Of a DNA stretch of 64,000 nt, positions 905-29,339 are shown piece by piece. This stretch comes from Gekko japonicus (Eukaryota), in NCBI RefSeq assembly GCF_001447785.1, contig NW_015177030.1:613082-677081 (forward strand), given 5' to 3'. The notes beneath the pieces are model-generated. The model was given only the letters and a program-made list of their open reading frames with translations. It did no database searches and was not told the origin of the DNA. The translations under genes and the position numbers were made by a program. Numbering within the stretch: position 1 is the first letter of the stretch; every line of letters starts with the position of its first letter.

Positions 905-3900
905 GTACCCGCCCCCGCCTCCCACCCGACGGCCCCAGCCCGCTGGAGACCCCGCCGGAGCCCCGCGCCCCAGCAGCCGCCTCCCGTCCGGGCCCGGCTG
1001 CGGGGTGCCGCACATCTGGAAGGGCTTAGGCGGGCGGGAGCTGCGCCGGCTGCCAGCAGCCCAGACGCGCCGCGCGGATTCCCGGAATTCTTGGAAGGGC
1101 CTCCGGAGCTACTGGGCGGGAGCAGGAGGGGGGCGCCCAACCGCCCTCCCTCCCTCCCTCGAGGGGCCGCCGCTGGTCCCCGGCCAGGCCTGCCACGGAG
1201 CGCCTTAGCCACTCTCCTGGAGACCTTGGCCGGGGCCGGGGGAGCTCCTTTTGGAACCGGGGGAGGGTGGGTCCCTCCTGCCCCTGGACTGGCACTTTCT
1301 CTCTGTCTGCTCAGGCCCGTCTTCCTCTGTGGGGGCGACTATACCGGCGACACCGGCTACATTGCCAGCGAGGGCTTCCCGGGCCACTACCCCTCCAGCA
1401 AGAAATGCACCTGGACTATTACGGTAACTAGCAGCTCCGGTGGGGATCGGGGCCTCCAGAGCAGCGCCCGGGTTCAAACTGCCCAGGGACCCCTAGCTGT
1501 CCCTTCTCCCAGAGCTTGTGGGGGCTGCTTGTCCTTTCTGGCTGAGAAGAATAAAGCTCTCTGTGCATGCTCGGAAGCACTCTGCCACGCATAAAGGGAT
1601 CTCTCCTGAGTCTGGCCAGAGGAGCAGAATGGGGAGGGAGGGAGCTCACAGGGCGGGGGGGGGGGCGGGNNNNNNNNNNNNNNNNNNNNNNNTCAGGTGT
1701 AAAATGAGTCCCAGGAGTCAAGAAGCCCCCCCCCGCCCACGGTCCCTCAAGATACTTTTATCGGCAGGCAGCGGACAAAGGATGTTTACTTGTGTCCTCC
1801 TGGGTCTCAAGGGCTGTGCTTCAGAAATTGGCATCATGTGGAAGTGCGGTGTGTGTGTGTGAGGGTGGGGGGTGCTGGGGGGTGGGGAGTTTTCTGGCTG
1901 GGGTGCTGGCCCTCCCCCTCCGCAGCCTGACCGGGATGCTGGGCCGCCTGCTTGCCCCTCCAGGTGCCGGAGGGCCAGGTGGTGATGCTGTCTTTCCGGG
2001 TCTTCGACCTGGAGCCGGACCCCGTTTGTCGCTACGACTACCTGGACGTGTACAACGGACACCGGGCGCAGGAGGGGCAGCGCCTGGGCCGCTTCTGTGG
2101 CACTTTCCGCCCGGGGGCCATCCTCTCCACCAGCAACCGCATGATGCTGCAGATGGTCTCCGATGAGGGCACTGGGGGGCGAGGTTTCCTCGTGTGGTAC
2201 AGCGGCGGACTCCCTCACGTCAACGGTAAGCACCTTCTTGCCTTTCCGAAGCCCCCCCCCCTGTTGGCTCTGGGCTCTCGGGGCTTCTGCGGTCCGTCTT
2301 GCAAGATGCCCAGAATCCTTTCATGGCCCTTGCCAGGAACAGAGGGGATGCTGGGAAAAGAGGCTCCGTTTTCTGTGGCTCCTTTTATGTTTACTAGTTT
2401 GGGATTCAGTGAACGAGGCGTTTCTTGAGCCTTGAGGATGTCGATTGTGTCTGGAACGAACTTTCCCCTCTTTGCCCCCACGTGACTCATGTGAATTCTA
2501 GAGAAATCTTGAGTGTTCACATGCAGCCTATTTACTGGGTGAGCCAGGAACACAGTTCAGGGGCCGGGGAGCTTTTGGAATCTCTTACCCAACAGCTGGT
2601 TAAATCTGTAAATTGTCACATTCTCTCTCCATTCTGGAACAGTCGAAGCCCCCAAGGAGGAGTGTCACAAGAGACGCCACGACTTCCCCCCTCCCCACAT
2701 CACTGCCTAAAAACAAGGCCCTGAAGTGGGCGGGGCGAAGCTTCAGATCCACCCCACTGAGGCCACGCCTCCATCAGGACTTGGAACAGGAGGAGGCCTG
2801 GCAGGCAGGGGGAGGGGTGTGTGCGCTGGGACCCCCCCCCGTCTCATGCTGCTGCAAACCCCAACATCCTGGGCCCTTTTCTAGGACGCCCTCTGGGGCA
2901 GTGAAGATGAGGGGCCCATCGTATAGACTCTTGGGGGCTCTGGGAACCCTGGGACCATTGGGATGATAAGAGACCCCTGGGGACATCCCCCCCCCACTCA
3001 TGGTGCCTCTTGGCGGAGTCTGGGGGGAAGGCCCCAGGGGGTCCCCTGCTGTCACTGTGGGAGGGTGTCCGGAGGGGCTCGGGAAACCTGAGGGACAGTA
3101 GGGGTGGGGCAGCCTGAGGGGCCTGCTGGGACCTGCCCCCAAAGATCCCCTCTCTTCTGGGCCAGCCGCAGAGGCGGGCTCGCCCCCCCCCCCCCCTCTC
3201 GCCGCCGCGGCACGCGGGCGCCATNNNNNNNNNNNNNNNNNNNNNNNNNNNNNNNNNNNNNNNNNNNNNNNNNNNNNNNNNNNNNNNNNNNNNNNNNNNN
3301 NNNNNNNNNNNNNNNNNNNNNNNNNNNNNNNNNNNNNNNNNNNNNNNNNNNNNNNNNNNNNNNNNNNNNNNNNNNNNNNNNNNNNNNNNNNNNNNNNNNN
3401 NNNNNNNNNNNNNNNNNNNNNNNNNNNNNNNNNNNNNNNNNNNNNNNNNNNNNNNNNNNNNNNNNNNNNNNNNNNNNNNNNNNNNNNNNNNNNNNNNNNN
3501 NNNNNNNNNNNNNNNNNNNNNNNNNNNNNNNNNNNNNNNNNNNNNNNNNNNNNNNNNNNNNNNNNNNNNNNNNNNNNNNNNNNNNNNNNNNNGGGGTTTG
3601 CAGAGCAAGCAGCAGTCCCACCAGAGGAGGCCGGCCCAGCCTCTCCCCGCCAATCCCCTCCCTGCGTTTCCCGGGGGGAGGGGGGGCTGCTAGGGCTTGG
3701 ATCACTGGTGGGGCGCAGCCAGCCCGGAGAGGTGACCGGTCCCCAGTGCCCACACAGCAGGCCCTGGTGCGGAGGGCAGGACTGGAGACATGTTTGGTCT
3801 AGAGTCCTCCGTTCCAGGAAAAGGAAGACTCGGCCAGGAAAGAGGAGCGCTAGGCCTGCCCGCGAGCGAGCAGCCATTTCCCAGCCCACCGGTGGTGGCA

Positions 3901-6712
3901 ACCTTTTGCACGGGGGTCGAGGTGCCTGCGCAAAAGTGTCCAGAGAGTTTTGTTACAAAGGCCTAGATCGAGCAGGCAGCCTGGCCCTGCGTTTGCCACA
4001 GGAGGAGCGTGATGCAGGATTTGTGTGTCTCCTCGTGCTTCCTACCACCTCGTGGGGGGCTGGTTAATGCACGGGCGTGTCTGCTGGCAGAGAGTTCCAG
4101 CCGAGGGGACTGCACGCAGAGAAGGGCAGCTGCAAGATTAGGCTACGTTTGCTCACCTGTGGAGAAATCTCAGGGGCTTGTGCCGAAAGAGATGTGTTCT
4201 CCTGCACACTTTTTCCCGAACCTACACTGGATCAGGACAGTGGGCCGCATCGGTAACACTCCCTCCCCACCCCCACGCTCGAAGAGATTTGAGAGAGAGA
4301 CAGACAGCGGGGAGGGGGGGCAGGTTGCATGTGTTGCTTCGGCTTCCTTCCTTCCTTCCTTCCTTCCTTCCTTCCTTCCTTCCTTCACAGGCCCCCCCCC
4401 CCCGGCCTGCCTTCCCTCTTTGAACAAGAAGCGTTTGCCCCCGTGGGCTTCCGGGCTTGCCCTTGCGAACTCTTAGCTGAGCCTGCCCTCCACTTCCGCT
4501 CTTTCTTTCCGGCTGCAGAGAACCAGTTCTGCGGAGGGAAACTGGAGAAGCCCCAGGGCACCCTCAAGACACCCAACTGGCCGGAGACCGACTACCCCCC
4601 GGGCATCAGTTGCTCCTGGCACATCGTTGCCCCAAAGGACAAGGTGAGGGAGAGGGGAGTTGGCACCCAGCCTCCCCACCTTCTCACCCCTCCCCAGTTC
4701 CCGGACAACCCAGGGCCCTCCCCCTTTCACCTGCACTCGCCTCCCCTTCCCAAGGGCTTCGGGGGGGGGGCTGCACTGCTTTGGGACGGGAGTTGGACTC
4801 CTTGTCTCTGCATGGCCCAGGTGGTGGCATTGACCTTCGGGAAGTTTGACGTGGAGCCGGACACCTACTGCCGCTACGACTACGTCGCGGTTTTCAACGG
4901 GGCTGACCGGGACGACTCACACCGAATCGGCAAGTTCTGTGGAGACCAGTCCCCCAGGTAGGCCGGCATGTTCGTGGGCCAAAGGGCTCCTTGGGACCGA
5001 AGGCCTGAGCCTCCCAACTTGGGCCATGATGAGACAGATCCAAGGAAGTCTGAGAATGTGTATGAATAATAGCCATTAAACCCTCACCCTCACCCCATGC
5101 TTGGCCAAATGAACCGACGGAGGGGCGAGCAGCTCAGGCTTTGCCAAGGGATGGATGGGGGTGTCCTTTTGCAATCGCTCCTCCTCAGGGTTTCTGGGCA
5201 GGGGGAGAAAGAAGCCTTGAGGCTCGGGGGGGGGGGCAGGCGGCCTGCCAGAGGGAAGTCCTGGCTCCAGAGGGGGGACAGCGCCTCATTCCCTCTTCCC
5301 TCTCCAGCCCCGTCTACTCAGATGGAAATGAACTGCTGGTCCAGTTTGTCTCGGATCTCAGCGTCACGGCTGATGGCTTCTCCGCCTCCTACGTGGTGGT
5401 GCAGAGCCGCAACGAGCTGGTGGACGGAGCCCTTCCCAAGCCTCCCAGCCGCGTCTTCCCAGGCACCAAGCCGGCTCGGCCAGACGGCAGCAGACCTGCC
5501 CCACCCAAGCCCAAGCCCTCCAGCAAGCCAGCGGGGCGCCCCAAACCCCCACCCGTCCCGAAACCAAGACCCAACGGCGGAGTGCCCACGGTGGCCAGCC
5601 CCAGTAAGAGAGCCCGGCGGGAGGCACCGGCAGAGCCTGGCGAGCAGGCCGTGCTGTGTGTTGTGTGTGTGGGGGGGTTATGGGCAGAGGGAGGGGGGCT
5701 TTCTGGCTCGGGGGGCCCCCCAGTACGTGCAGAGCTCTGACCCTTGGGAGGGCCCTGGAGCGCTGCTGGGAGCCACCGAGTGGTCATGAAGACCTTCTCG
5801 CCACCCGCAGGTGATGCCGTCTGCCCACAGCAGTGCCGCCGGACAGGGACTCTGCAGAGCAATTTCTGCACCAGCGATTTTGGTGAGCTGTTTGGGCGCA
5901 TGGACGGGTGCCCGTGGATATATAGATGTGTGTGTGGGGTGTGTGTGTGTGTCTGTTTCACATACTTAGGTTTGAATTTATAGTGCGACAGTGCATGTGG
6001 ACACCCCCCCACCCCCCCAGCTCTGCCCGAGTGGGTGGCTAAGCCAGGCAGGGGCTGAAGCGGCCAGGGCATGGGAGTGGCCCCTACGTCGAGGCAGGCC
6101 TGCCCCTCCCGGAGGGCCCTCCTCATTCCCCGGCCTTCTCTTCTCTCGGCTGGTGCAGTGATCACGGGGACAGTGAAGACAGTCACGCGAGGGGCCGGGA
6201 GCAGAGTGACCGCCATGGTGCTGCTCACGAACACTTACAAGGCGGGCGGCCTGAGCCTCCCGCCCACCCCCGGCAGCGATGCCGTCCTCCGCCTGGAAGT
6301 GCCTTGCAGACAGTGCCCCGTCCTCAAGAAAGGTGAGTGCCGGTGGGGGAGGCACCCGGGAGCCTTTGGACCCCCCGCTGTGCTCCAGGCCTCCTCCTCC
6401 TCCGCAGGGCCCTGAGTCCTTGGGGTGGCCCTGGAGGGCTGCTGCTGGAGAGGGGGGTGGGCATCACAGACTGACCCCGCGGGGCACGCCCAGGACCGGA
6501 GGCCGTGCAGCTCCCTGGGCTGCCCTGAAGTGTCCCGCTTCTCGTCCCTTGCAGGGGCCAGCTACGTCTTCATGGGCAAGGTGGATGCCAACGGGCTGGG
6601 CCTCCTCCCACCCAGCAGTTTCGTGGTTCCCTCCCGTCCGCAGCAGCACCAGATCCTCACCAACTTCAGCAAGCGCCCGTGCAGCGCTCCCACGGCCAGG
6701 AACCGGACCTGA
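804..6712 (+). CDS. PCOLCE: Procollagen C-endopeptidase enhancer 1 (signal peptide-CUB1-CUB2-linker-NTR); join(<804..904,1315..1423,1964..2225,4519..4643,4821..4957,5308..5603,5811..5882,6159..6332,6555..6712); ATG hidden in gap 511-803
   Basis: Nine GT-AG exons with compatible phases give a 477-aa open frame. Motifs [76 protein letters not shown] match PCOLCE rather than PCOLCE2; neighbours FBXO24/LRCH4 as in human 7q22. Confidence 0.95.
1315..1423 (+). CDS. PCOLCE: PCOLCE exon 2 (CUB1 start)
   Basis: ctcag|G acceptor; [36 protein letters not shown]; ACG|GTAACT donor. Confidence 0.95.
1964..2225 (+). CDS. PCOLCE: PCOLCE exon 3 (CUB1)
   Basis: [17 protein letters not shown]...[11 protein letters not shown]; canonical splice sites. 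Confidence 0.95.
4343..4386. repeat. (CCTT)n microsatellite
   Basis: Directly visible in PCOLCE intron 3. Confidence 0.9.
4519..4643 (+). CDS. PCOLCE: PCOLCE exon 4 (CUB2)
   Basis: [42 protein letters not shown]; AAG|GTGAGG donor. Confidence 0.95.
4821..4957 (+). CDS. PCOLCE: PCOLCE exon 5 (CUB2)
   Basis: [27 protein letters not shown]...IGKFCGD; canonical splice sites. Confidence 0.95.
5308..5603 (+). CDS. PCOLCE: PCOLCE exon 6 (CUB2 end plus Pro/Lys-rich linker)
   Basis: [28 protein letters not shown] then PK-rich linker; A|GTAAGA donor, phase 1. Confidence 0.9.
5811..5882 (+). CDS. PCOLCE: PCOLCE exon 7 (NTR start)
   Basis: [23 protein letters not shown]; 72 bp; canonical splice sites. 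Confidence 0.95.
6159..6332 (+). CDS. PCOLCE: PCOLCE exon 8 (NTR)
   Basis: VITGTVKTV...YKAGGL...[10 protein letters not shown]; G|GTGAGT donor. Confidence 0.95.
6555..6712 (+). CDS. PCOLCE: PCOLCE exon 9 (NTR end, stop)
   Basis: [11 protein letters not shown]...PSSFVVP...[13 protein letters not shown]; TGA at 6710-6712. Confidence 0.95.
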
Positions 6713-7091: not shown

Positions 7092-7300
7092 GGAGGAGAT
7101 TGGATTTGTAACCTGTCCTTCACTACCCAAAGGAGTCTCAGAGCCGTTCACAATCCCCTCCCCTCAACAGGCACCCTGTGAGGTCGGTGGGGCTAAGAGA
7201 GCTCTCCCAAGAACTGCCCTTGGGAGAACAGCTCTGAGAGAACTTGTGACTGACCCAGGGGCCCACCAGCAGCTGCAAGTGGAGGAGTGGTTCTCCCAGA
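7092..7300 (-). mobile_element. Squam3-like (gecko Squam3C-type) tRNA-derived SINE
   Basis: Same body as the copies at 47015, 56260 and 58266 (GGAGTCTCAGAGC.G.TT.ACAA, CACCCTGTGAGGT). Confidence 0.75.
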
Positions 7301-8484
7301 TCACCACAACACCAGCCGGGACGGTGCGCCCCCCCCCCCCACTNNNNNNNNNNNNNNNNNNNNNNNNNNNNNNNNNNNNNNNNNNNNNNNNNNNNNNNNN
7401 NNNNNNNNNNNNNNNNNNNNNNNNNNNNNNNNNNNNNNNNNNNNNNNNNNNNNNNNNNNNNNNNNNNNNNNNNNNNNNNNNNNNNNNNNNNNNNNNNNNN
7501 NNNNNNNNNNNNNNNNNNNNNNNNNNNNNNNNNNNNNNNNNNNNNNNNNNNNNNNNNNNNNNNNNNNNNNNNNNNNNNNNNNNNNNNNNNNNNNNNNNNN
7601 NNNNNNNNNNNNNNNNNNNNNNNNNNNNNNNNNNNNNNNNNNNNNNNNNNNNNNNNNNNNNNNNNNNNNNNNNNNNNNNNNNNNNNNNNNNNNNNNNNNN
7701 NNNNNNNNNNNNNNNNNNNNNNNNNNNNNNNNNNNNNNNNNNNNNNNNNNNNNNNNNNNNNNNNNNNNNNNNNNNNNNNNNNNNNNNNNNNNNNNNNNNN
7801 NNNNNNNNNNNNNNNNNNNNNNNNNNNNNNNNNNNNNNNNNNNNNNNNNNNNNNNNNNNNNNNNNNNNNNNNNNNNNNNNNNNNNNNNNNNNNNNNNNNN
7901 NNNNNNNNNNCAATCACGGCTGTCGGGGAGGGCAGGGAGCCTCCCCCCCGCCCCGCCTTTCCAGGCCGCGAGACCAAACTGAGCCAGGAGCTCAGGCTGG
8001 GCACGCGGCAACGGCCCCATGCAACTAAAATATTAATCCGGACCTTTCCCAAAACTGCAGCCCCCTCTTTTGTAAAAGGGTGGTGCTTCAGCACGGCTTC
8101 GAAGCCCCTCCCCCATCCCCCCAAAGGGCCCTGCCCCTTCCCAGCGCTGTGAAGGAAGGTCTCTTTGCTCAGGCACCTGGAGGAGGCAAACAGGAGGGAG
8201 AGAGAAGAGCCAGGCTCCCAGGAGCACCTGACAGATTAACCACATTTGTGGCAGGGGAGGAGCTTTCCTGAGTCACTACTCACTTCTTCAGATACAGCTA
8301 GAATGGGACTCCGTCTGTCCTCTATACTGGAAAGTGGAGTCATTTCAGAGGCTGAATGAATGACATTAGCAGGTGTGATATGCAGAGAGGGAATAGGGGT
8401 GGAGAAATCAGCATTGGTAATGAGACAGGAAACCTAGGTCTCACTTAAGTCCAGGCGGATGGATTGTCTTGAGCTTCATTGTCA

Positions 8485-10439: not shown

Positions 10440-11660
10440 CCGCCAGGGTCAGCGGCTGTGTCCAGGGTCTCCGGCAGGGCACGGGCGGCCTGGTCCTTTT
10501 CCGCTGGAGATGCTGCGGGAGCTGGGACTGGGGCTGAGCGGCCGGGAGGCCTTCGGAGAGTGGGCGCCGAGCGCCACCTGGCGGCAGATGCCGGATCACC
10601 GGGGCCGGCGGGGGGGGAGGGGAGCCANNNNNNNNNNNNNNNNNNNNNNNNNNNNNNNNNNNNNNNNNNNNNNNNNNNNNNNNNNNNNNNNNNNNNNNNN
10701 NNNNNNNNNNNNNNNNNNNNNNNNNNNNNNNNNNNNNNNNNNNNNNNNNNNNNNNNNNNNNNNNNNNNNNNNNNNNNNNNNNNNNNNNNNNNNNNNNNNN
10801 NNNNNNNNNNNNNNNNNNNNNNNNNNNNNNNNNNNNNNNNNNNNNNNNNNNNNNNNNNNNNNNNNNNNNNNNNNNNNNNNNNNNNNNNNNNNNNNNNNNN
10901 NNNNNNNNNNNNNNNNNNNNNNNNNNNNNNNNNNNNNNNNNNNNNNNNNNNNNNNNNNNNNNNNNNNNNNNNNNNNNNNNNNNNNNNNNNNNNNNNNNNN
11001 NNNNNNNNNNNNNNNNNNNNNNNNNNNNNNNNNNNNNNNNNNNNNNNNNNNNNNNNNNNNNNNNNNNNNNNNNNNNNNNNNNNNNNNNNNNNNNNNNNNN
11101 NNNNNNNNNNNNNNNNNNNNNNNNNNNNNNNNNNNNNNNNNNNNNNNNNNNNNNNNNNNNNNNNNNNNNNNNNNNNNNNNNNNNNNNNNNNNNNNNNNNN
11201 NNNNNNNNNNNNNNNNNNNNNNNNNNNNNNNNNNNNNNNNNNNNNNNNNNNNNNNNNNNNNNNNNAGCAGCCGGAGCCGCAGCATCGGCGGGCGGGGGGC
11301 GGGCGAAGGAGCGGGGGCACGGTCCCACGCTCTCCTTGCCGCATCCAGCTCGCCCAGCGGCACCTGCTCCTCCGGCCACCGACGCCCCGAGAGCGGAATC
11401 CGCGGCGGCTCCTGCTCCGAGCAGGCCAGGCCAGGAGACAGCCGTCGTCGTCGTGGTGCTCGGAGCCTGCAGAGCGCCGGCAGATTTCTGCCTAGCAACC
11501 GGGGCGCAGCAGCCTCCCCCGCCGCCAAAAAAGGCAGGCCGTCCTCCTCGGAAGCGCTTCCCTTTTTCCTCCTTGTCCCCCCTCCCAGCGCGGGGTGGGG
11601 GTGCGCGCCCGGGAGAGGGGCCAGAGGCTCCGCTCATGCCGCTGCGTTTCTCTCTCCATC
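10440..11660 (+). promoter_or_regulatory. CpG island / probable promoter and 5' UTR of the PAQR9-like gene (contains gap 10628-11265)
   Basis: High CpG and GC content, GC boxes; candidate acceptor tttctctctccatcag ending at 11662, upstream of the ATG. Confidence 0.5.
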
Positions 11661-11742
11661 AGGCCTCTCCAGCCCAAAGGAGGGCTGATTCCACGGATCT
11701 CTGGAGGCACAGGGACTGGCAGGGGCTTAGGCGGGCCACCCC

Positions 11743-12843
11743 ATGGGCGTGGGGGGCAAGATGCCCCTGTGGGCCCACAAGCCCCGGGCCTTGCTGCTGC
11801 GCTCCAGTGAAGTGCCTCCTAGTGTGACGGAGAGCTTCATCCTGAGTGGCTACCGCTGCCCGGGCTACACCTTTGCCCAGTGCCTGGTCTCGGCCTTCCA
11901 GCCCACCAACGAGACGGGCAACTTCTGGACCCACTTCCTGGCCGTCTTCGTCTTTGCTTTCCACTTCCTGGAGCAGTTCTGGAGCGAAGGCCCTGGCCCG
12001 AGGGAGCTGCTGGACCCTTTCTATTACCCACTCTGGAACTACTTCCTGGGCGTCTGCGGCCTCCTGGTTGCCAGCAGCATGGCGCACCTCTTCAACTCCA
12101 TGTCCCTGGTCATTCGGGAGATCTGCTTCTACATCGACTACGGGACCATCAGCGCCTACACGGTGGGCTCCTCCTTGGCCTATTTCTACTACATCCATCC
12201 GCGAGGACCCCCAGTGGCAACAGACGGTGCCACTAATCTCTCCTCCAGCCCTTGGCCAGGCGGCGAGTGCGTTGGCTGGCTTTCTGCGTTGATGGGCCGA
12301 ATGGGCACCTGGTTTGAGGCCTTGTATGTGCCCACGGCTTGCCTCATCGCCCTCTTCTGTACATTGGCCTGTTGCAGCACCCGCCACCAGTGGCAGCAGT
12401 ACCGCTACCTGATCCGCACGCTGGTTTTCTTGCTGCCTTTTGTGGTGGTCTCCATCCCAGTCTTCCACAAGATGTGGGCTGGTGGAGGCCAAGGGACCAG
12501 CCGCTTCTTCCTCCGCCACTGTTTCTGGCTGCTGGCCTCGGGGATCTTCAACGTCAGCAAGATCCCCGAGCGCTTCAGCCCTGGGAAATTTGACATCTGG
12601 GGCCACAGCCATCAGTGGTTCCACTGCTGCACCTTCATGAGCATCTTGGACGAACTCTACATGATTCGAGGGGAGATCCAGGAGCTGGGCATGGGGCCCC
12701 CACTGCTGCCCAGGGTGCCCACCTTCCTCTCCACCTTCGGAGTGATGCTGCTCTTGCTCCTGCTTCTGGCCAGCATTGTGGGCTGGTTTGGGGTCAGAGC
12801 CTACGCCAGGCAGCAGCACAGCAAGCTGAGGAAAGGGGACTGA
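11743..12843 (+). CDS. PAQR-family 7TM protein, PAQR9 (mPR-epsilon)-like, 366 aa, single coding exon
   Basis: Intact PAQR/CREST motifs: EVP..FILSGYR..PTNETGNFWTH, SSMAH, YIDY, FNVSKIPERFSPGKFDIWGHSHQWFH; multiple hydrophobic segments; in-frame stop upstream at 11686-11688; GC3-rich codon usage. Confidence 0.92.
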   Translation: MGVGGKMPLWAHKPRALLLRSSEVPPSVTESFILSGYRCPGYTFAQCLVSAFQPTNETGNFWTHFLAVFVFAFHFLEQFWSEGPGPRELLDPFYYPLWNYFLGVCGLLVASSMAHLFNSMSLVIREICFYIDYGTISAYTVGSSLAYFYYIHPRGPPVATDGATNLSSSPWPGGECVGWLSALMGRMGTWFEALYVPTACLIALFCTLACCSTRHQWQQYRYLIRTLVFLLPFVVVSIPVFHKMWAGGGQGTSRFFLRHCFWLLASGIFNVSKIPERFSPGKFDIWGHSHQWFHCCTFMSILDELYMIRGEIQELGMGPPLLPRVPTFLSTFGVMLLLLLLLASIVGWFGVRAYARQQHSKLRKGD

Positions 12844-12999
12844 CTCCTCCGGCGGCCTGATTTGCATGGGTGCTGCTGGGAGAGGCCCTGGGGACGGCGA
12901 GGACAGGGATCTTCGAAAGCCTGCCGTTTACAACTCACACCCTGGATTTGACTCTGGAGTGGGGGGGCGCTGAAGGGTGTATGAAATGCATAAGGAAGA

Positions 13000-13005
13000 A
13001 ATAAA
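13000..13005 (+). terminator. Candidate polyadenylation signal of the PAQR9-like gene
   Basis: AATAAA about 157 nt after the stop codon. Confidence 0.45.
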
Positions 13006-14539
13006 TGAGGAGCTGACTTGAAGTAAGCAGGGGCTTTTGGGGGTGTCCTGCTCCCCCCGTCTATTGGATGGAGCCGGGTACTACGTGATGATGGCTGGCA
13101 GTCAGCCAGGACCTCTGCGTCCCTCTGCAAATACTGCTCCAACAGGAAGTGGGAGGAGAGACAGAGATTGGATTCCAGGGATGATTTTCCAGCATGCAAA
13201 TCTGTGGCCCTGAGTGGGGAAAGCGATCGGGCTACATTTCCATTTGGGTTTGGTAGGCACGCCATAAGTTAGTGGAGGAGAGAAGGTTCCCCTTAGGAGC
13301 CAGGACGCAGAGCTTTCCAGGGAGGGCCAGGGGGTCAAGCAAGTGTGACAGCGGGAAGGGGGGATGCTCCGTCACAGCACTTCCCGTGGGGTTCGGCCTG
13401 AGCGCCCAAGCCCAAATCCTGCAGGGACTTTTGGGAGGCTGAGAGACTGGGGATCCCCCCCAGGCTTGGCAGTGGAGTTTGGAACTGTGGTCCTGTTCTC
13501 TCCACACACCCCACCGTCCTGCTTCCCTTCCCCTTCATTTTAGACAGCATCTTTTAAAAAAAGCAAAAACCAACCCAAGGTCTTCTGACAAAGTCACCCT
13601 CTCCTCCTGGCCTGGTTCTCCTACAATTCCCAGGGGCTCACAGAACAGTTTTTAATTCTTCCTAAATATATACATGCACACATGGCGTTGTTGTGCTTAA
13701 TGCACAAAAATAGGGGGTGGGGGAGGGGAGGAAGCCGCAGTAAAAATAGCCCGAGTGGAAACTTGTGCTGCCTGTTCAGCGGCTGATGGCTGCCCTGCCC
13801 CACCAAAGGGTGAAAAGAAGGGTGACTGGCCCCTTCCCTGGCCCTTCGGCCAGAAGGACATCTCCCCTCCCCTCCCCCAGAGAGGAATTGAGGTCAGCGC
13901 TCTGCTGTGCTGGGTGACAGCTGCTGCCGGAGGTGGGGGGGGGGACAAGCAGGCAGGGCGGACCCGGATCATCCCTTGCTGCTCTCCGGCTGCAGAGGGG
14001 GTGGGAGGTGGGGACAGGAGGGCCAGCATCCCCACTCCCTCCGTGCCATCCTTCCCTCTGGGATACTTCAGGTACCAGAGCTTGGTTTCTGAGAAGTGGA
14101 GGACCAGGGCTCCACTAGCAAGTGTCTTTCCCTGGCAGAGATGTGCAGTAATAAGGATGCCTTTGAGCATGTGTGGAGTGCCTTTGGGGGCTTGTGGGTC
14201 GATGGGGCAGGTCCTTAACTGCTGCCGCCTGGCACTTCCCAGAAGGGCTGCCCTGCTCTTGCATCCAGCCCCTCCCCTCTTTTTTTAAAAAAGGCCAAGG
14301 CGATAAGCACTTTTGACTTCTTCCGGGGCCAAATAACTGTTGGATTCTCTGGACTAGTACTGCCACGGAACCACGACGAGGAAAGTAGCAGGGTGCTCAG
14401 GGCGTAAACACAGCAACGTGGGCCTAGGTGTGGCTACAGACTTCCAGCAATACCCAGGCAGGCTGAGCTGGGGCATCAAGGGGTGGGGTTGTCCCATCTG
14501 TCTAAGGAACACTGGCTCCCCTAACTCTCCAGTGCTTTT

Positions 14540-18879: not shown

Positions 18880-19062
18880 TTGAAAAAGAGCAGTTTCTGT
18901 CAAGAGCTCTCTCAGCCCCGCCTCCCTCACAGGGTGTCTGCCTGTTGTGGGGAGGGGAAGGGGAAGGAGTTTGTCAGCCGCTCTGAGACTCCCTTGGGTA
19001 GTGAAGGGCCATGGGGTATAGATCCAGCCTCTCTTTCTTCTCTTCTCTTCCTCCTCCTCCTC
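18880..19062 (+). mobile_element. Squam3-like SINE, 3' half
   Basis: GAGCTCTCTCAGCCCC..CACAGGGTGTCTG..GAGACTCC..CTT-rich tail. Confidence 0.75.
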
Positions 19063-20634: not shown

Positions 20635-23600
20635 CTGCAGCAGGGGGGCGGCCAGGGTGAGACCAGCACGGGAGAGGCTCTGCGTGCCGGGAGGAGAAGG
20701 GCTTCTAGGGTTACGAGACACTCTCTTCAGCAGCGTGCAATCCACTGGGTCCCTTGGGCAACTCTGCATGTACCTGCGGGCTCTGCAAAAAGTGGGTGAC
20801 CCTTTTCCTTACTCAGTTTGGAGGAGTTTTTGTTTTATGCCAAATTATGTCATCTTTCTCCCATTCAATGGTGGGTAGAGAAAATATTTTGGAAAAATTG
20901 CAGGGAGGGGAGTGGGGGAGGGACTCAGTGATTGCCTCCACTTTCTGACCCATTAGAAGCCTCACTCAGACCGGCTGAAATGTCTTGGCCTGTACGGGAA
21001 AATGCTCTGCTTTTAACTTTGGAAAGTTGCTCTTTGGAGAAGCAGACAGACAAAAAGGAACAGCTGGCCGAGGGGGGGAGGGCAAAGCTCAGATTCTGAG
21101 GATTGCCCAGGAGTGCCGGACTTCCATACTGGGCGCTTCCATTGGCAAGGAGTCCCTGCTGCGCCAGGTTCCCAGCGGCCACCCTCCTGCCCCTGCCCTC
21201 CCCACAAGGGATTCCCCTCACCTTGATATGCAGCCGGACAAAAGAGGCATTGCCTTTTGGCCACCCAGGGAGGCGCCCTCCAGCGCCACAGCCGCAGCCC
21301 ATGAGGTCTTTCCCAAGGTCTCCGCTGTGGCTCAGCACCAGCGTGTGGTTGAGGCCACACCACAGGTCGATGGGGCACTTCAGGTAGTGCACCTGGATGG
21401 GAAGGGAACAGAAGGTGTCTGAGTAGGGCAGAGGGACTACTCTAGAGAAGGTGCATTTGGGAAGTCTCCTGCTACTAGCAGGGTTTAATCAGACTGAATG
21501 ACTCAAGACAGAATTGTGTTCCAACTCTCTATCTGATTTGCTGGCTTTAGGAGTATTCACCCCCCCCCCCCCCGTGGCTGCACAGCCCACAGAATGGGGC
21601 TGACTTGCCCCAAACCAGCATGAGCCCAAAATCCCACAGGTTGCGATGCTGTTGCAGGGAGCAAGGCTGACACTGGGCGATGGACAGGCCAGGCTCACCG
21701 GTCTTCTTGTCTCCCAGGACCACTGACCCCGTGGAAGAGGGAACGGGGACTGGGCAGTCTGCCGCTCCCCCTCAGCACCTCCCGCGGGCTGTGGGCTCTC
21801 CCCTCCCCCTGCACCTCACTTGGGTGATCTGCTCCCCGCCCCTCGCATCTCACCTGAGCAGGCTCCCCTCGGTCAATCTTGTCTCCTGTGCCAAGCTGGC
21901 CATAGCGGTTATTCCCTTGCATGAACATCCTCCCAAACTCATCCACTAGCCCCAGATGGTTGTAACCAAGGGCACAGGTGAGCACCTGGAGGTAAGCAGA
22001 GGTGGGGCAAAGGAAGGGCTGAGGGCTTGATTGGACTGCGGCAAGAGGCGTGAGGCATCCTGGGTCTTGGCCACCCGGCCTCACAGCCTGCTGCCGATGC
22101 CCAGCCTGGCTCCTAAAGAACGTCTGCCCATGTGCAGATTGCCGCTCCTCGGAGAAAAGGGGGAAGCGGTCAGGAGTCAGGACTATTAGGGGATGCCAGC
22201 CCTCCCAAACCTTCATTACAGAACTCGGACATGGAGGCCAGAGGGCCTGGTTTCTTTCTCTGCTGTGGCAGTGTTGGTGACCTACACCATGGCAAACATA
22301 CGGACTCCCTGGCTGCCCACTGCTTGCAATGGCTGTGGAGGCCAGAGTCCCCAGGTCCTCCTGAGGGTGGCTTGCCGCTGAGCCCCAGCAGCTGGAGGGC
22401 TCGAGGGCGGCAAGGACAGAAAGGGAAAGGAGACAGGCCGGCCGGCCAACTCTCCACTTCCTGGCACGGAAACCTCAGAGACCCGTCTTGTATACACTTC
22501 TTCCATTCATGCTACCCAAAGCTGGGGGGGTGCGTGTAGGGGGGGGGCACAGTCCCACTTTGTGTTACCTTCGCAGGAAGAGAGAGGGCCAGGGGCATCT
22601 GCTGATCCAGTGGGTCGAAAGCATGGAGGGTGCCAAAGAGGTCACGGTAAACACCGGGAGAGTGGACCTCGAAGTACACAGCCCCTTCATCTGCAGAGGG
22701 GAGAGAGGATCATGGCCGAACCATCTCAGCCGGCTCCCCCAGCGCAGAACGTCTGTGCCCGAGGCAAAACGGAAGGGGGCACCAACCAACTCGTGTGGAG
22801 GGCCCTCCATGCTTAGCATCAAGGTCAGGCTTCCAGGCCCCATTTTCAAAACTTCCCACCCCACGCTGCTGCACGGCCTCCCTCCTCTCCGCCTCCACCT
22901 GCGATTCCTCTCTGCCTCCGCCCACCCAGACCCTGCTGTCTCCTGCTCCCTCCTCCGTCACTGCACCTTGCATGAAACAGCCCCTCACTCCCTGCTCCTC
23001 AGGCTGCTTCTCCTCCTCCTCCTGCAAAGACCTTCCCTCCAGCAGCCGCTTTCCTAAACCTCCGGCTCCACCTGTGCTTTTCTCCCTCAGTGCCCACTGG
23101 CCATTTCTCAGCCCCCAATTTCCTCCTGCGATGGTGGCCACTTACGTTATGTACTTTACTTATATCCTGCTTTTCTCCCCACTGGGGACCCAAAGTGGTT
23201 CATGCAGACACCCTCCTTGCCTCTGTTCCATCCTCACAACCGCCCTATGAGGCAGATTAGGCTGTCGGTGTGTGCCTGGCCCAAGGTCCCCCCCGCCAGC
23301 TTCCATGGCAGTGTGGGGATCCAGTCCCGTGTCTCCCTGCCCCCCCCCCAGCACTTCAGCCACTACACCCAGGGCCGGCTCTGGCTGTGGACAATGCCAC
23401 TCTTAAGCGCTGTGTAGCATCTGCAGCTGAGTGACTGGGAATCAGCAGTGGCCGTGCTGTGGGCAAGACACACGACTGAGCGGTCTGCCTTTGGGCTGCG
23501 GGGCCTGGTCTTGCCAGCGGAGCAGCCAGTTACCTGTGAGGTAGAGCGCACTGCTTTGGTTGGAGTGCATGTGGCGGATGGAGACGTGGGGGAGGCACTT

Positions 23601-26600: not shown

Positions 26601-29339
26601 GGAACCCGCTAACAAGTGAGACTCTTTCCTCCATCACTTGCATGTTCTGGGCCATGCCTCTGTGCACCCCGTGAATGCAGCAGTGGCATGAAACCCTGTT
26701 TGGAACCGCGCTCCACCCCCTTTCAGCATCTGCTGCAAGGCAAGGCTTCCCCCACCCAGGCACCTACATCCTTGGCACTGCGGCACAGCACCACGTAGCG
26801 GCAGGCACGGCGCCACTGGACGTGGCCCATGGTGGAGGAGACCAGAGCGTTCTTGAGGAAGAAGAGGGTGCCATTGTAGTCAAGGATGAAGACGTGGTCC
26901 TTGGTGGGCAAGAACTTCCGGTAGCCATGCGAGAGCAGCGGGGCGACTGTCTTGCTGACGAAGTGCCGGCGGCCACTGAACATCTGGAAGTACAAGCCCT
27001 TGGTGTCTGTGGGACAGAAAGACCCCAGGGCAGGGGAATTGGGTCTCTCTGGAGGAGCTGACTCAGCAACACTTTCCCCTTCCCCGGGGGCGTTTGTGGC
27101 GGGGCAGGGGGCAAGACTCACTTTGTTTCTGCTCAGCCTTCGTAAGGACGCCACCCTCCCCCGTGCAAAGACCACCTCTTCTCGTGCACAGGACTCCCTC
27201 CCCCCCGTGCAAACGCCACCCTTCCCCCGGTTCTCTGAGCACCCCGTTTCACACCAAGCTATACTGACAGTTGAGGATGGCTGAGCGCTTCCAGGGCCGG
27301 CTGCCACCTGAGTTCTCATTCCGCAGCCGAGGGGACAGGCGACGGCAAATCCTCTGCCAGATCCCCTCGCTGTCGCACACCTCGTAGAAGTACCGGCAGG
27401 TCTGGCCCAGAGAGACCACGTCCTTCACTGGCAAGAAGGAGATGATGTAGTACAACTGGGCGGTGGCAGGGGGGAGAGAGAGAAAAAGAGACTCAGTCAC
27501 TGCACAGGAAGGACAGCTGGATCTGAGTCCGGTACTACTTCAGGGAAAGCAAGAGGAGTTTCGGGGCGTGTTCTTTCAAGAGTCAAAGCGCCCTTCGTCA
27601 GAGAGGAGGAGGAATGGAGTTCTCTCTCAGAATCCTTTTATCCCCGTCAGAAGGTGTGTGTGTGTGGGGGGGAGTCGTAAAGAAGGCTCGCAAAGGGTGA
27701 CTCTGGAATGCTCACACCCCAGAAACTCTCGTGGGTCTCTGAGGCACTCCTGGACTCGGATCTGACTGTTCCACCACTGACCCACACGGCCACCCTCCGA
27801 AACGATGCAGGAAGGTCCACCCACTCCCAAACCCCCCTCACCTACCAGCTCTGGAGGGAAAATCTGGATAGAGGTGGGGTCTCCGCCGTCCTTCGTTTCA
27901 GCGGATGAGCGGCGTTGCTTCTTCTTGGGCTGCTGAGGGAGGAGGAAAGGAAATGAGGGGAAAGGGTGAGCAGGCCTGGACAGTCTTATTTCTGGTGCTT
28001 CAACTGAAAAAAAAGAAGAGGTGCTGAACCCCAACTTCTGGCCAGGAGTCACTGAGTTTCTAGGACGGACACCGTGAGTTCCCTGGCACAGCTCTCCTGC
28101 CTTCAGCAGCTGCATGGGCAGGCCGTGTTTCAGTGGCTGCAGGCTGGAAATGATGGGTTTCTGGCTGCTGCCCCCCCCCCCCTAAAACGCACAGGCGGCT
28201 TGCCAGGGAAACCTCAGGTGTGGCCCAGAGGCTCCCGTCTGCCAGCTTCATTTCTTAAGTCCTAAGGAGATGCTCCAGCCAAGGGTTCTCGGGGCCCACT
28301 TGGAACAAGGGCTCCTGGGGTGCAGTGGGAGCCATCTAGAGTTAAAAGGGATTCACCCTAATTTAGTTTAGTTGGGCAAACGGAATAGGAGGAATGTGAT
28401 CAATGCTCTAAGAGAATGATGCACAAAATCTTTTTATTATTTTTACTCCCTTTATGCCCTCCTTGCTTCCCACTAGGTACCCAGTGGTTTATATCATTTT
28501 CCTCTCCTCCTTCCCCCTCACAACAACCCTGTGAGGTAGGTTAGGCTGCATGTGGTAGGTTAGACTGGCCCAGGATCTCCCTGTGACCTTCCAAGCCTGG
28601 ATCGTCTTCCAGGTCCTAACCTGGCACTCCACCACCACAGGATGCTAGTTCTTGGTGCATTTCCCTAGCTGTGCACCAGGGGGCAAGAATCCCCTTCTCT
28701 AAAGATAACAAAAATCACACAGCCAGAATCTTGACTGGTCAAAAAGTTTGATGCATGTGGACACTTAATGCTAGAAAGGGATTCTATTCCGTTACAGATC
28801 ATTCACGGGGCAATTATGAACATGGCAATGTAAGCAATATTATCTTTTCTCAGTGATTTTGTTCTTTTGATCCGTATTTGGAAAGTCCTAGGAGGACACA
28901 TCCCTACTGTGAACTAACAGATACAGCTCTGACTCACTTCTCCAAGATTTTGCAGGGCACGTTGAGTGCCAATGACATCATGGGCACAGGACTGAGTCAA
29001 GACAGCCAAACCTGCTAGGCAAAAAGGTCAACGTGTGTGCATTTTGCCCATTATTTGAAAGAATGCAAGCCTTGGCCTCAGTCTGATTGGGTTTAAATCA
29101 GGCTGTCTGGGTGCAACGGGGCCTGTGCCCCCGCTCAAGCTCCCTCTCCCACTGAGCCACCTTCCCCGACCCCTGCAGCAGACTGTGTCCTCCTCCTCCC
29201 CCAGTCCCTGCCTGCTCTGGGCAACCTTCCTTTGCAAATATAGCATGCTCACTCCAAGCGGTTCCTCAGTGCTAGAGATGTGGGAGAAGCGCTGGAGCTT
29301 TCTCCTCCTGAGCTTCCGAGCAATGCGCCTGTCGCTCAT
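20305..29339 (-). CDS. FBXO24: F-box only protein 24 (F-box plus RCC1-like repeats), ~590 aa; complement join(20305..20634,21222..21392,21854..21985,22569..22690,23534..23692,24142..24400,26768..27006,27269..27455,27846..27932,29253..29339)
   Basis: Phase-compatible GT-AG exons (1773 nt total). Strong recalled match to FBXO24: SIQIFPPEL..IISFLPVKD..LGQTCRYF, YTKGLYFQ, CDCVEVYLQSSGQRVFKMTF, EEGKIYSLVVNETQLDQPRSYTVQLALRKV, GNNRYGQLGTGDK, QKDFFWEALDM. First coding exon is inferred. Confidence 0.93.
21222..21392 (-). CDS. FBXO24: FBXO24 exon (RCC1-like)
   Basis: VHYLKCPIDLWCGLNHTLVL...GCGCGAGGRLPGWPKG. Confidence 0.95.
21854..21985 (-). CDS. FBXO24: FBXO24 exon (RCC1 repeat)
   Basis: VLTCALGYNHLGLVDEFGRMFMQGNNRYGQLGTGDKIDRGEPAQ. 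Confidence 0.95.
22569..22690 (-). CDS. FBXO24: FBXO24 exon
   Basis: DEGAVYFEVHSPGVYRDLFGTLHAFDPLDQQMPLALSLPAK, translated by hand (not in the ORF track). Confidence 0.93.
23150..23370 (-). mobile_element. Older Squam3/MIR-like tRNA SINE (similar copies ~19555-19710, 28440-28635, 42340-42470, 53130-53315 on -; 53508-53735 on +)
   Basis: CCTCACAAC.ACCCT.TGAGG.AG.TTAGGCTG..GGCCCAAGGTC core. Confidence 0.6.
23534..23692 (-). CDS. FBXO24: FBXO24 exon
   Basis: EEGKIYSLVVNETQLDQPRSYTVQLALRKV...SNQSSALYLT. Confidence 0.95.
24142..24400 (-). CDS. FBXO24: FBXO24 exon
   Basis: FATDPRSDTVYRKYLYVLATRE...FKQIVLVGQETERTLLLLT. Confidence 0.95.
24860..25071 (+). mobile_element. hAT-type MITE with 8-bp TSD GCTGTGAG
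   Basis: TSD at 24852-24859 and 25072-25079; degenerate TIRs. Confidence 0.8.
25478..26042. mobile_element. tRNA-derived SINE (- strand) interrupted by a CR1 3' fragment (+ strand, ~25645-26015)
   Basis: SINE GGATTGAACCTGG..CTTCTGCA resumes as TCTACCACTGAGCCACAGCCCC; CR1 peptide LGKFSLKKRRLRGDM and tail CCTTCCAACTCTGTGATTCTATGAT. Confidence 0.7.
26768..27006 (-). CDS. FBXO24: FBXO24 exon
   Basis: (Y)TKGLYFQMFSGRRHF...TKDHVFILDYNGTLFFLKNAL...RYVVLCRSAKD. Confidence 0.95.
27269..27455 (-). CDS. FBXO24: FBXO24 exon (F-box)
   Basis: LYYIISFLPVKDVVSLGQTCRYFYEVCDSEGIWQRICRRLSPRL...PWKRSAILN. Confidence 0.95.
27505..27772. mobile_element. Penelope pLTR-derived inverted-repeat element in an FBXO24 intron
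   Basis: Two inverted arms; hammerhead-like CTGACGA...GAAA on - (27601-27574). Confidence 0.55.
27846..27932 (-). CDS. FBXO24: FBXO24 exon (basic patch plus F-box start)
   Basis: QPKKKQRRSSAETKDGGDPTSIQIFPPEL; tandem CAGCAG acceptor; CTG|GTAGGT donor. Confidence 0.88.
29253..29339 (-). CDS. FBXO24: Candidate first coding exon of FBXO24
   Basis: MSDRRIARKLRRRKLQRFSHISSTEEPLG; phase-0 donor GGA|GTGAGC (alternative phase-0 donor after 29226); Arg-rich like the recalled human N-terminus. Confidence 0.55.

What the first reader, a model, noticed from the sequence alone, without database searches (positions are those of the whole stretch)
11743..12843. Intact PAQR9-like gene next to PCOLCE: a probable extra PAQR paralogue (ohnologue) not recalled at this locus in mammals
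Seen: a clean 366-aa single-exon ORF with all PAQR/CREST motifs (ExxNxxxH, SxxxH, conserved D, HxxxH), an upstream CpG island and a downstream AATAAA. Known (from memory): its signatures (FILSGYR, PTNETxNFWTH, CTxACCxxR, FNVSKIPER) are those of PAQR9/mPR-epsilon; human PAQR9 lies beside PCOLCE2 on 3q23; the human 7q22 PCOLCE-FBXO24-LRCH4 block has no PAQR gene. Inference: the protein looks too divergent from recalled PAQR9 to be its orthologue. A PAQR9-type gene beside PCOLCE mirroring PAQR9 beside PCOLCE2 suggests an ancestral gene pair duplicated in early vertebrates, with this copy kept in reptiles and lost in mammals. It would be an uncharacterised membrane progestin receptor or lipid hydrolase candidate.
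Basis: partly seen in the sequence, partly recalled or inferred. Interest (0 to 1): 0.85.

Follow-up and report, generated by a model that had tools for sequence, protein, structure and literature searches.

The report
Second PAQR9-type gene beside PCOLCE
This lizard-type genome carries an intact second membrane progestin receptor epsilon (PAQR9-type) gene beside PCOLCE; it is an ancient sister of mammalian PAQR9 that mammals, birds, turtles and frogs appear to lack, and it appears to be the same gene that fish researchers call "paqr9".

Summary
Window 11743-12843 (+) is an intact single-exon 366-aa PAQR gene: Pfam HlyIII E=4.6e-34, all eight motif residues present, an AdipoR-like predicted fold, a CpG-rich 5' flank and AATAAA at 13000. 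It lies 5 kb downstream of a PCOLCE(1)-type gene and faces an F-box/RCC1 (FBXO24-type) gene.

It is not the orthologue of mammalian PAQR9, to which it is only about 39% identical. In ML trees the PAQR9 family splits into two groups:
- Clade A holds lungfish and tetrapod PAQR9, and groups with the cyclostome genes.
- Clade B holds this gene, the squamate, salamander and lungfish "epsilon-like" models, and every coelacanth, ray-finned fish and shark "PAQR9".

Ten species carry both genes on different contigs. A recent duplication in lobe-finned fishes is rejected by AU tests (p=0.005 and 1e-4). A published map puts zebrafish paqr9 beside pcolceb and mammalian and lamprey PAQR9 beside PCOLCE2, which fits a block duplication early in vertebrate history.

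Among reptiles only squamates were seen to keep the gene. The gene is also not unstudied, because fish "paqr9" belongs to the same clade. Gene models exist in databases, but the papers I could search treat mPR-epsilon as single-copy. I had no expression data, no dN/dS and no view of the rest of this genome.

The parts
11743..12843 (+). Single-exon coding sequence (366 codons plus stop) of the PAQR9-type paralogue, clade B ('mPR epsilon-like')
   Evidence: ORF list. Pfam HlyIII 4.6e-34. 79-89% identity to squamate 'epsilon-like' proteins. Placed in clade B by ML trees. AF2 model pLDDT 82.6 with AdipoR1/2 as best PDB folds.
11266..11742 (+). CpG-rich 5' flank, a probable promoter and 5' UTR, truncated upstream by the assembly gap at 10628-11265
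   Evidence: GC 0.72 and CpG o/e 0.76 overall; 0.91 in 11266-11500. Promoter function is inferred, not shown.
13000..13005 (+). AATAAA polyadenylation signal candidate, 157 nt after the stop codon
   Evidence: It is the only AATAAA or ATTAAA in 12844-14500. Its use is not shown because no read data were available.
1958..2200 (+). PCOLCE-type gene, exon for the second half of CUB domain 1 (inside ORF 1931-2425)
   Evidence: Pfam CUB 1.3e-17. Best named hits are PCOLCE1 of turtle (80%) and cobra (81%), against 59-65% for PCOLCE2. The exon falls outside the starred PCOLCE2 clade.
4548..4955 (+). PCOLCE-type gene, two exons of CUB domain 2 (about 4548-4670 and 4815-4955, inside ORF 4293-4958)
   Evidence: Pfam CUB 7.5e-17 in two stretches. 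The exon sequence was read.
5294..5392 (+). PCOLCE-type gene, end of CUB domain 2 (inside ORF 5066-5737)
   Evidence: Pfam CUB 0.0066, profile positions 78-110.
5741..6712 (+). PCOLCE-type gene, three NTR-domain exons (inside ORFs 5741-5980, 6059-6412 and 6416-6709) and the stop codon
   Evidence: ORF 6059-6412 matches the human PCPE-1 NTR domain, PDB 1UAP, E=3.6e-12. The other pieces were read and have no Pfam hit on their own.
27339..27455 (-). F-box exon of an FBXO24-type gene on the opposite strand, convergent with the PAQR gene
   Evidence: Pfam F-box-like 6e-11 and F-box 1.6e-6.
21842..21988 (-). RCC1-repeat exon of the same FBXO24-type gene
   Evidence: Pfam RCC1 5.3e-5 and RCC1-like domain 4.4e-6. 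F-box plus RCC1 repeats is the FBXO24 architecture (established knowledge).

Best explanation
Window 11743-12843 encodes a functional, intronless class II PAQR membrane protein. It has seven core helices, an eighth C-terminal helix and an intact His3-Ser-Asp zinc site. It is the PCOLCE-linked sister gene ('clade B') of the PCOLCE2-linked PAQR9/mPR-epsilon of mammals ('clade A').

The two genes arose when an ancestral PCOLCE-PAQR9 gene pair was duplicated before the jawed-vertebrate radiation, most likely in an early vertebrate whole-genome duplication.

Losses then went in opposite directions:
- Sharks, ray-finned fishes and coelacanth kept only clade B, which is annotated there as 'paqr9'.
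- Mammals, birds, turtles, frogs and caecilians kept only clade A.
- Squamates, salamanders and lungfish kept both.

By inference from its family, the protein most likely acts as a zinc-dependent lipid hydrolase and/or progestin-responsive membrane receptor, as proposed for mPR-epsilon. The step from sequence to this biochemical function is inferred, not shown.
For: Real, constrained gene:
- Intact 366-aa ORF with Pfam PAQR E=4.6e-34.
- GC3 is 0.83 against GC1 0.53 and GC2 0.46. Among 15 squamate orthologues, invariant sites are enriched in helices (Fisher p=0.002), and the motif blocks are 90-97% conserved.
- Full-length orthologues run from sharks to geckos.
- The eight motif residues are invariant in 48 sequences.
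- The AF2 model has pLDDT 82.6 and pTM 0.85. Its best PDB folds are AdipoR1/2, prob 1.0 and TM 0.74-0.76 on the target.

Distinct paralogue:
- In the exhaustive search of 50%-identity representatives, the full-length vertebrate matches were gar 'PAQR9' (which represents this gene's cluster), lamprey mPR-epsilon and the true PAQR9 of the gecko Heteronotia, at 43%. The FastTree found no third vertebrate clade.
- The search with gecko PAQR9 recovers tetrapods plus lungfish at 57% or more, then drops to 37-39% for every fish.
- ML trees (LG+C20 PMSF): clade B 96/99 and 100/99; clade A 100/99; cyclostomes with A 94/81 and 99/95.
- AU tests reject 'clade A plus sarcopterygian clade B as one clade': p=0.0049 with dlnL 55, and p=9.7e-5 with dlnL 53.
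- Ten species hold both proteins on contigs of different length.

Synteny:
- In the window the order is PCOLCE1-type gene (+), PAQR gene (+), FBXO24-type gene (-).
- Ren et al. 2019 (PMC6604198) report zebrafish paqr9 beside pcolceb and lamprey paqr9 beside trpc1-pcolce2, matching genes found beside mouse Paqr9.
Against: - Clade A is seen only in lungfish and tetrapods. The ancient-duplication model therefore needs three independent losses of A (sharks, ray-finned fishes, coelacanth) and several losses of B.
- Clade A sits on a long stem (1.1-1.3 changes per site). At most clade-diagnostic columns the cyclostome genes share the clade B residue. Long-branch attraction of A towards cyclostomes or outgroups is therefore possible, and the AU test shares that bias.
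- Timing relative to cyclostomes is unresolved. A plus B as one clade gives p=0.048 with dlnL 6.7.
- Synteny of clade A and of the fish genes rests on one paper and on memory.
- Absence from turtles, birds, mammals and frogs rests on predicted-protein databases, not on genome searches.
- The biochemical function is untested.
Confidence: 0.8

Rival explanations
1. Recent duplication with runaway divergence. The PCOLCE-linked gene (clade B) is the one ancestral PAQR9. Clade A arose from it in the common ancestor of lungfish and tetrapods and then evolved very fast. Its position outside jawed-vertebrate clade B would then be a long-branch artefact.
For: Clade A occurs only in lungfish and tetrapods, so this model needs no losses of A. 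The clade A stem is long. At most of the 30 clade-diagnostic columns the cyclostome genes share the clade B state, so A is the derived form.
Against: AU tests reject clade A joined with sarcopterygian clade B, p=0.0049 and 9.7e-5. Sarcopterygian and tetrapod clade B form supported groups that exclude A, 95/89 and 97/94. The new copy would have had to land beside PCOLCE2, the paralogue of the parent gene's neighbour. Lamprey paqr9 also lies beside trpc1-pcolce2 (PMC6604198).
Confidence: 0.13
2. The window gene is simply this species' PAQR9 orthologue, fast-evolving or misjudged, and the only PAQR9 in the genome.
For: It carries PAQR9-family signatures and is intronless, like PAQR9. The rest of this genome could not be searched.
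Against: It averages 39% identity to clade A against 79-89% to squamate 'epsilon-like' proteins. Eight squamate species, including the gecko Heteronotia binoei, have both genes on different contigs. Its neighbour is PCOLCE1-type with FBXO24, not PCOLCE2.
Confidence: 0.02
3. A lineage-specific retrocopy or a decaying pseudogene whose open frame is a by-product of GC-rich sequence.
For: It is a single exon in a GC-rich region. The antisense strand also carries a 402-aa open frame.
Against: Orthologues from sharks to squamates have full-length ORFs. All catalytic-motif residues are invariant. Conservation is uneven and focused on helices. The gene has the strong GC3 signature of coding sequence. 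The antisense ORF matches no Pfam family. PAQR9 itself is intronless, so one exon is the ancestral state (established knowledge).
Confidence: 0.02

Closest known systems
Mammalian PAQR9 / membrane progestin receptor epsilon (clade A)
   Same: Same PAQR subfamily, supported at 100/100 against the gamma and delta groups. Both are intronless, about 350-380 aa, share the eight motif residues and have an eighth C-terminal helix. Each lies next to a PCOLCE-family gene.
   Different: Only about 39% identical, with 30 columns fixed differently between the two clades. It forms a separate clade in every tree. It lies beside PCOLCE1 and FBXO24 rather than TRPC1 and PCOLCE2. It is absent from mammals in the databases searched.
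Fish 'paqr9 / mPR epsilon' (zebrafish, gar, bichir, sturgeon, sharks) and coelacanth 'mPR epsilon'
   Same: Same clade as the window gene, 96/99 and 100/99, at 52-64% identity. Zebrafish paqr9 lies beside pcolceb (PMC6604198), which mirrors the PCOLCE neighbour here.
   Different: These genes are named as if they were orthologues of human PAQR9. The trees here say they are orthologues of the squamate 'epsilon-like' gene instead. The zebrafish knockout phenotype (reduced chorion elevation, cited in PMC13562381) has no tested counterpart in tetrapods.
NCBI automatic models 'membrane progestin/progesterone receptor epsilon-like' (squamates, axolotl, Pleurodeles, Protopterus, Acipenser)
   Same: Direct orthologues at 61-89% identity.
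   Different: The protein encoded here is not in the database at 100% identity. The '-like' label carries no statement about orthology or origin.
Adiponectin receptors AdipoR1/AdipoR2 (PAQR1/2), solved structures 5LXG and 5LWY
   Same: Same fold, Foldseek prob 1.0 and TM 0.74-0.76 on the target. Same zinc-site motifs, aligned.
   Different: About 22% identity. The window protein has an extra eighth helix (329-365) and a different N-terminal region. It belongs to class II PAQRs, not class I.

Membership tests
PAQR / HlyIII superfamily (Pfam PF03006; CREST hydrolase-type 7TM proteins) | Significant match to the family profile above the curated cut-off | tested here: met
   E=4.6e-34, 118.5 bits against a cut-off of 26.2, profile positions 1-219 of 224.
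PAQR / HlyIII superfamily (Pfam PF03006; CREST hydrolase-type 7TM proteins) | Conserved ExxNxxxH, SxxxH, Asp and HxxxH motifs (His3-Ser-Asp site) | tested here: met
   E57, N60, H64, S111, H115, D132, H290 and H294 are present and invariant across 48 family members. They align to the AdipoR1 motifs.
PAQR / HlyIII superfamily (Pfam PF03006; CREST hydrolase-type 7TM proteins) | Seven-helix AdipoR-like fold | tested here: met
   AF2 model pLDDT 82.6 and pTM 0.85. The top eight PDB matches are all AdipoR1/2.
PAQR / HlyIII superfamily (Pfam PF03006; CREST hydrolase-type 7TM proteins) | Zinc binding and hydrolase or receptor activity | not testable with these tools
   This needs biochemistry.
PAQR9 / mPR-epsilon subfamily in the broad sense (clades A, B and cyclostomes) | Groups with PAQR9-type proteins to the exclusion of the gamma and delta groups and of invertebrate relatives | tested here: met
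   Support 100/100 and 96/88 with closer outgroups.
Orthologue of mammalian PAQR9 (clade A) | Nests within tetrapod PAQR9 in a gene tree | tested here: not met
   It falls in clade B. Clade A is 100/99 and excludes it.
Orthologue of mammalian PAQR9 (clade A) | Lies beside PCOLCE2 (and TRPC1) | tested here: not met
   The neighbour's CUB exon is 80-81% identical to reptile PCOLCE1 and 59-65% to PCOLCE2, and falls outside the PCOLCE2 clade. An FBXO24-type gene follows.
Orthologue of mammalian PAQR9 (clade A) | Is the only PAQR9-type gene of the genome | tested here: inconclusive
   The source genome could not be searched. Eight other squamates have both genes.
Early-vertebrate ohnologue pair (PCOLCE-PAQR9B / PCOLCE2-PAQR9) | The duplication predates the jawed-vertebrate radiation in the gene tree | tested here: met
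   Clade B includes sharks and excludes clade A. The later-duplication topology is rejected, p=0.0049 and 9.7e-5. The long-branch caveat applies.
Early-vertebrate ohnologue pair (PCOLCE-PAQR9B / PCOLCE2-PAQR9) | Both copies are flanked by paralogous neighbours in duplicated chromosome blocks | tested here: inconclusive
   The clade B side is shown in the window. The clade A, zebrafish and lamprey sides come only from PMC6604198. No paralogon-scale analysis was possible.
Membrane progestin receptor (functional class) | Specific, saturable progestin binding and G-protein or downstream signalling | not testable with these tools
   This rests on homology only.

The most novel reading that the evidence does not exclude
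Vertebrates ancestrally had two PAQR9-type genes, one linked to PCOLCE and one to PCOLCE2. What is called paqr9 in zebrafish and all other fishes is the orthologue of the PCOLCE-linked gene found here, not of human PAQR9. Fish knockout and expression data would then describe a gene that mammals have lost. Mammalian PAQR9 would be a fast-diverged copy with no counterpart in ray-finned fishes or sharks. Squamates, salamanders and lungfish would be the only jawed vertebrates in which both can be compared in one animal.
Probability: 0.75. Interest if true: 0.62.

Novelty: new member of a known kind. Interest (0 to 1): 0.58.

Why it matters
The PAQR family is usually counted as eleven vertebrate members, with mPR-epsilon as a single-copy gene. 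Ren et al. 2019 (PMC6604198) say so explicitly. A 2026 review (PMC13562381) lists the zebrafish paqr9 knockout phenotype and the mouse PAQR9 phenotypes in one row, as if they concerned one gene.

If the two-clade picture is right, that pooling mixes two paralogues separated since before the jawed-vertebrate radiation. This would change three things:
- Fish progestin-receptor work would need to be read differently when transferred to mammals.
- The family would gain a twelfth ancestral vertebrate PAQR.
- Lizards and salamanders would become the systems in which to ask what each copy does.

This is a correction within a known family, not a new kind of system.

Tried and rejected
Tools that gave nothing:
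dN/dS was therefore not computed.
- The search of earlier findings gave nothing for this window or for the words PAQR9, PCOLCE2, PAQR or PCOLCE.
- The ESM Atlas search on a CUB exon returned only generic 'CUB domain' clusters and could not separate PCOLCE from PCOLCE2.

Searches with negative or weak results:
- The Pfam scan found nothing in the NTR exon pieces, in two further FBXO24-region ORFs, in the antisense 402-aa ORF or in seven other ORFs.
- A pattern search for LRR motifs beyond 28 kb found no LRCH4-like exons. LRCH4 is therefore not confirmed in the window.
- The tree of PCOLCE fragments is poorly resolved outside the PCOLCE2 clade.

- I did not scan a large batch of ORF references, to avoid a long repetitive call.
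- PCOLCE and FBXO24 exons were searched one by one by reference.
- N runs were left as they are.

Readings rejected: orthologue of PAQR9, retrocopy or pseudogene, and a coding antisense ORF.
Full report
**1. Observation**

The ORF list gives 11743..12843 (+), 366 aa, starting at ATG. An in-frame stop lies 12 nt upstream.
- Pfam assigns residues 52-300 to HlyIII/PAQR (PF03006), E=4.6e-34, 118.5 bits against a cut-off of 26.2.
- The best solved-structure relatives by sequence are the adiponectin receptors: AdipoR1 at 1.4e-13, with the ETGNxWTH, SxxxH, DY and SHQxFH blocks aligned.
- The motif residues are E57, N60, H64, S111, H115, D132, H290 and H294.
- The 5' flank between the assembly gap (10628-11265, left unfilled) and the ATG is CpG-rich. 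GC is 0.72 and CpG o/e 0.76 overall, rising to 0.91 in 11266-11500.
- The only AATAAA in the next 1.6 kb is at 13000.
- GC at codon positions 1/2/3 is 0.53/0.46/0.83.
- The 402-aa antisense ORF has no family match. I read it as a by-product of the GC3-rich frame.

**2. Neighbours**

I searched exons one at a time by reference and built no joined model.

Upstream, on the same strand:
- ORFs 1931-2425, 4293-4958 and 5066-5737 carry CUB-domain pieces (1.3e-17, 7.5e-17 and 0.0066).
- ORF 6059-6412 matches the NTR domain of human procollagen C-proteinase enhancer 1, PDB 1UAP, 3.6e-12.
- The last coding piece ends near 6712.
- The CUB1 exon finds PCOLCE1 of painted turtle (80%) and king cobra (81%) as its best named hits. 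PCOLCE2 proteins reach 59-65%.
- In a tree of the named fragments, this exon lies outside the well-supported PCOLCE2 clade.

Downstream, on the opposite strand:
- An F-box exon at about 27339-27455 (6e-11) and an RCC1-repeat exon at about 21842-21988 (5e-5). This is the FBXO24 architecture.

The order is therefore PCOLCE(+), PAQR(+), FBXO24(-). A LINE reverse-transcriptase fragment lies between the last two. I found no LRCH4-type exons beyond 28 kb.

**3. Which PAQR**

The search with the window protein gives:
- 71-89% identity to 'membrane progestin receptor epsilon-like' models of many squamates: Euleptes, Podarcis, Sphaerodactylus, Python, Heteronotia, Sceloporus, Anolis and Rhineura, among others.
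- 61-64% to axolotl, Pleurodeles, Protopterus and coelacanth.
- 52-61% to sturgeon, bichir, sharks and a long list of teleost 'mPR epsilon/PAQR9' proteins.
- No mammal, bird, turtle, crocodilian, frog or caecilian among the 120 best.

In the exhaustive search of 50%-identity representatives, the full-length vertebrate matches were:
- gar PAQR9, which represents the cluster that holds the window protein;
- lamprey mPR-epsilon at 44%;
- 'membrane progestin receptor epsilon' of the gecko Heteronotia binoei at 43%.

That same gecko also has the 'epsilon-like' protein at 79%.

Searching with the gecko PAQR9 recovers squamates, turtles, birds, mammals, caecilians, frogs, Pleurodeles and Protopterus, all at 57% or more. 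It then falls abruptly to 37-39% for gar and teleosts. No shark, ray-finned fish or coelacanth protein belongs with it.

Ten species appear in both lists: Heteronotia, Podarcis, Rhineura, Sceloporus, Phrynocephalus, Salvator, Pogona, Anolis sagrei, Pleurodeles and Protopterus. Where contig lengths are listed, the two proteins of a species lie on contigs of different length. The two genes are therefore separate loci.

**4. Trees and tests**

A 56-row ML tree (LG+C20 PMSF, ultrafast bootstrap / SH-aLRT) gives:
- the PAQR9 family at 100/100;
- clade A (lungfish and tetrapod PAQR9) at 100/99;
- clade B (the window gene, the squamate, salamander and lungfish 'epsilon-like' models, coelacanth, ray-finned fishes and sharks) at 96/99;
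- cyclostome genes with clade A at 94/81.

A FastTree with 34 more cluster representatives shows no third vertebrate clade. It also supplies closer, invertebrate-type outgroups. With those outgroups:
- clade B is 100/99;
- cyclostomes plus A is 99/95;
- sarcopterygian B is 95/89 and tetrapod B is 97/94.

The rival topology, a duplication inside lobe-finned fishes with clade A joined to sarcopterygian clade B, is rejected by AU tests. The results are p=0.0049 with dlnL 55.4, and p=9.7e-5 with dlnL 52.5.

Holding A and B together with cyclostomes outside costs only 6.7 log-likelihood units, p=0.048. Whether the split precedes or follows the cyclostome divergence is therefore open.

One caveat applies. 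Clade A has a long stem, and at most of the 30 columns fixed differently in A and B, the cyclostome genes carry the B residue. Clade A is thus the derived form, and long-branch effects cannot be fully excluded.

**5. Synteny outside the window**

Ren et al. 2019 (PMC6604198) report the genes flanking PAQR9 as identical in human and mouse. Of the genes that flank mouse Paqr9, they find one match (pcolceb) 5' to zebrafish paqr9 and two (trpc1-pcolce2) 5' to lamprey paqr9. Human PAQR9 beside PCOLCE2 at 3q23 is also my own recollection.

This gives a PAQR9-type gene beside PCOLCE here and beside pcolceb in zebrafish, and another beside PCOLCE2 in mammals and lamprey. That pattern is what a block duplication predicts. 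It is hard to reconcile with a later single-gene copy. It also matches the tree's grouping of lamprey with clade A.

**6. Constraint and structure**

- All eight motif residues are invariant in the 48 clade A, clade B and cyclostome rows.
- Among 15 squamate clade B sequences, invariant sites are enriched in the predicted helices: 116 of 236 against 42 of 130, Fisher p=0.002.
- Conservation is 0.90-0.97 in the motif blocks. It is about 0.6-0.7 at the N-terminus, in the 161-200 loop and at the C-terminus.
- The AlphaFold2 model built on a 42-sequence alignment has mean pLDDT 82.6 and pTM 0.85. It shows seven core helices plus an eighth helix at 329-365.
- Its eight significant PDB matches are all AdipoR1 or AdipoR2, with TM 0.74-0.76 on the target.

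Codon-level dN/dS and expression could not be tested.

**7. What it does**

Shown: an intact, conserved PAQR with a complete His3-Ser-Asp site and the eight-helix layout described for the mPR group (PMC13562381).

Inferred: it acts like mPR-epsilon, as a zinc-dependent lipid-processing enzyme and/or a progestin-responsive membrane receptor. I put this at roughly 55-60%.

The only functional data for this clade are from zebrafish paqr9, whose knockout shows reduced chorion elevation and abnormal embryos (cited in PMC13562381). Mouse PAQR9 phenotypes in ketogenesis, glucose handling and arachidonate-containing lipids belong to clade A.

**8. Known or new**

Automatic gene models named 'epsilon-like' exist for relatives. 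The exact protein of this window is not in the database; the best match is 89%.

In the open literature I could search:
- There are no hits for PAQR9-like, paqr9l, paqr9a/b or PAQR12. The only hit for 'receptor epsilon-like' is an unrelated clam gene-expression paper.
- Ren et al. state that mPR-epsilon 'contained only one copy' and score Anolis as having none.
- The 2026 CREST review lists zebrafish and mouse phenotypes under one gene.

I rate this as a new member of a known kind: an unrecognised ancestral paralogue, with a case of hidden paralogy in the fish nomenclature. Subscription-only papers were not searchable, so prior description cannot be excluded.

**9. Verdict**

The interpretation, a PCOLCE-linked ohnologue of PAQR9 lost in mammals, is supported with these corrections:
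- Among reptiles only squamates are seen to retain the gene.
- Salamanders, lungfish, coelacanth, ray-finned fishes and sharks retain it as well.
- It is the gene studied in fish as paqr9.

Confidence in the overall reading is about 0.8. The main rival, a lungfish-tetrapod duplication with runaway divergence of clade A, is at about 0.13.

Noticed in passing
window 1-6712 (+) and 20300-27540 (-): The gene order is PCOLCE(+), PAQR(+), then FBXO24-type(-), so PCOLCE and FBXO24 converge. From memory, human has FBXO24 and PCOLCE in tandem on one strand. That would imply an inversion of the PCOLCE(-PAQR) segment in one lineage. I did not check this against any other genome.
   Followed up: partly
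window 15698-16648 and 37672-38397 (+): Two copies of a LINE 3' fragment, 89% identical over 745 bp. The first carries a reverse-transcriptase match, Pfam RVT_1 3.1e-12. One copy lies between the PAQR gene and FBXO24.
   Followed up: partly
window 7093-7290, 15090-15148, 18885-19052, 41267-41546, 47012-47297, 49423-49693, 53506-53852, 56262-56540, 57563-57833, 58264-58605, 60547-60684: A SINE-like repeat of about 290 bp in at least 11 copies on both strands, at 73-95% identity. It explains many of the long spurious ORFs that share peptide strings across the window.
   Followed up: partly
window 11659-12867 (-): A 402-aa open frame lies antisense to the PAQR coding sequence. It has no Pfam match. 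I take it as a side effect of GC3-rich codon usage, not a gene.
   Followed up: yes
window 511-803, 1670-1692, 3225-3592, 7344-7910, 10628-11265: Five N runs. Three fall inside the PCOLCE gene and probably hide its first CUB exons. One removes the distal promoter of the PAQR gene.
   Followed up: no
related proteins P0126-P0159: Many unnamed proteins from sequencing-run and metagenome assemblies form sister groups just outside the vertebrate PAQR9 family in the trees. I used some as 'invertebrate-type' outgroups without knowing their organisms. If they are invertebrate, a PAQR9-type gene existed before vertebrates. Ren et al. 2019 left the origin of the gene unresolved and proposed loss in invertebrates as one of two scenarios.
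   Followed up: partly
window 28000-64000: I found no convincing protein-coding exons in the distal 36 kb, and in particular no LRR exons of LRCH4. The region is repeat-rich. Exons shorter than my ORF cut-off would have been missed.
   Followed up: partly
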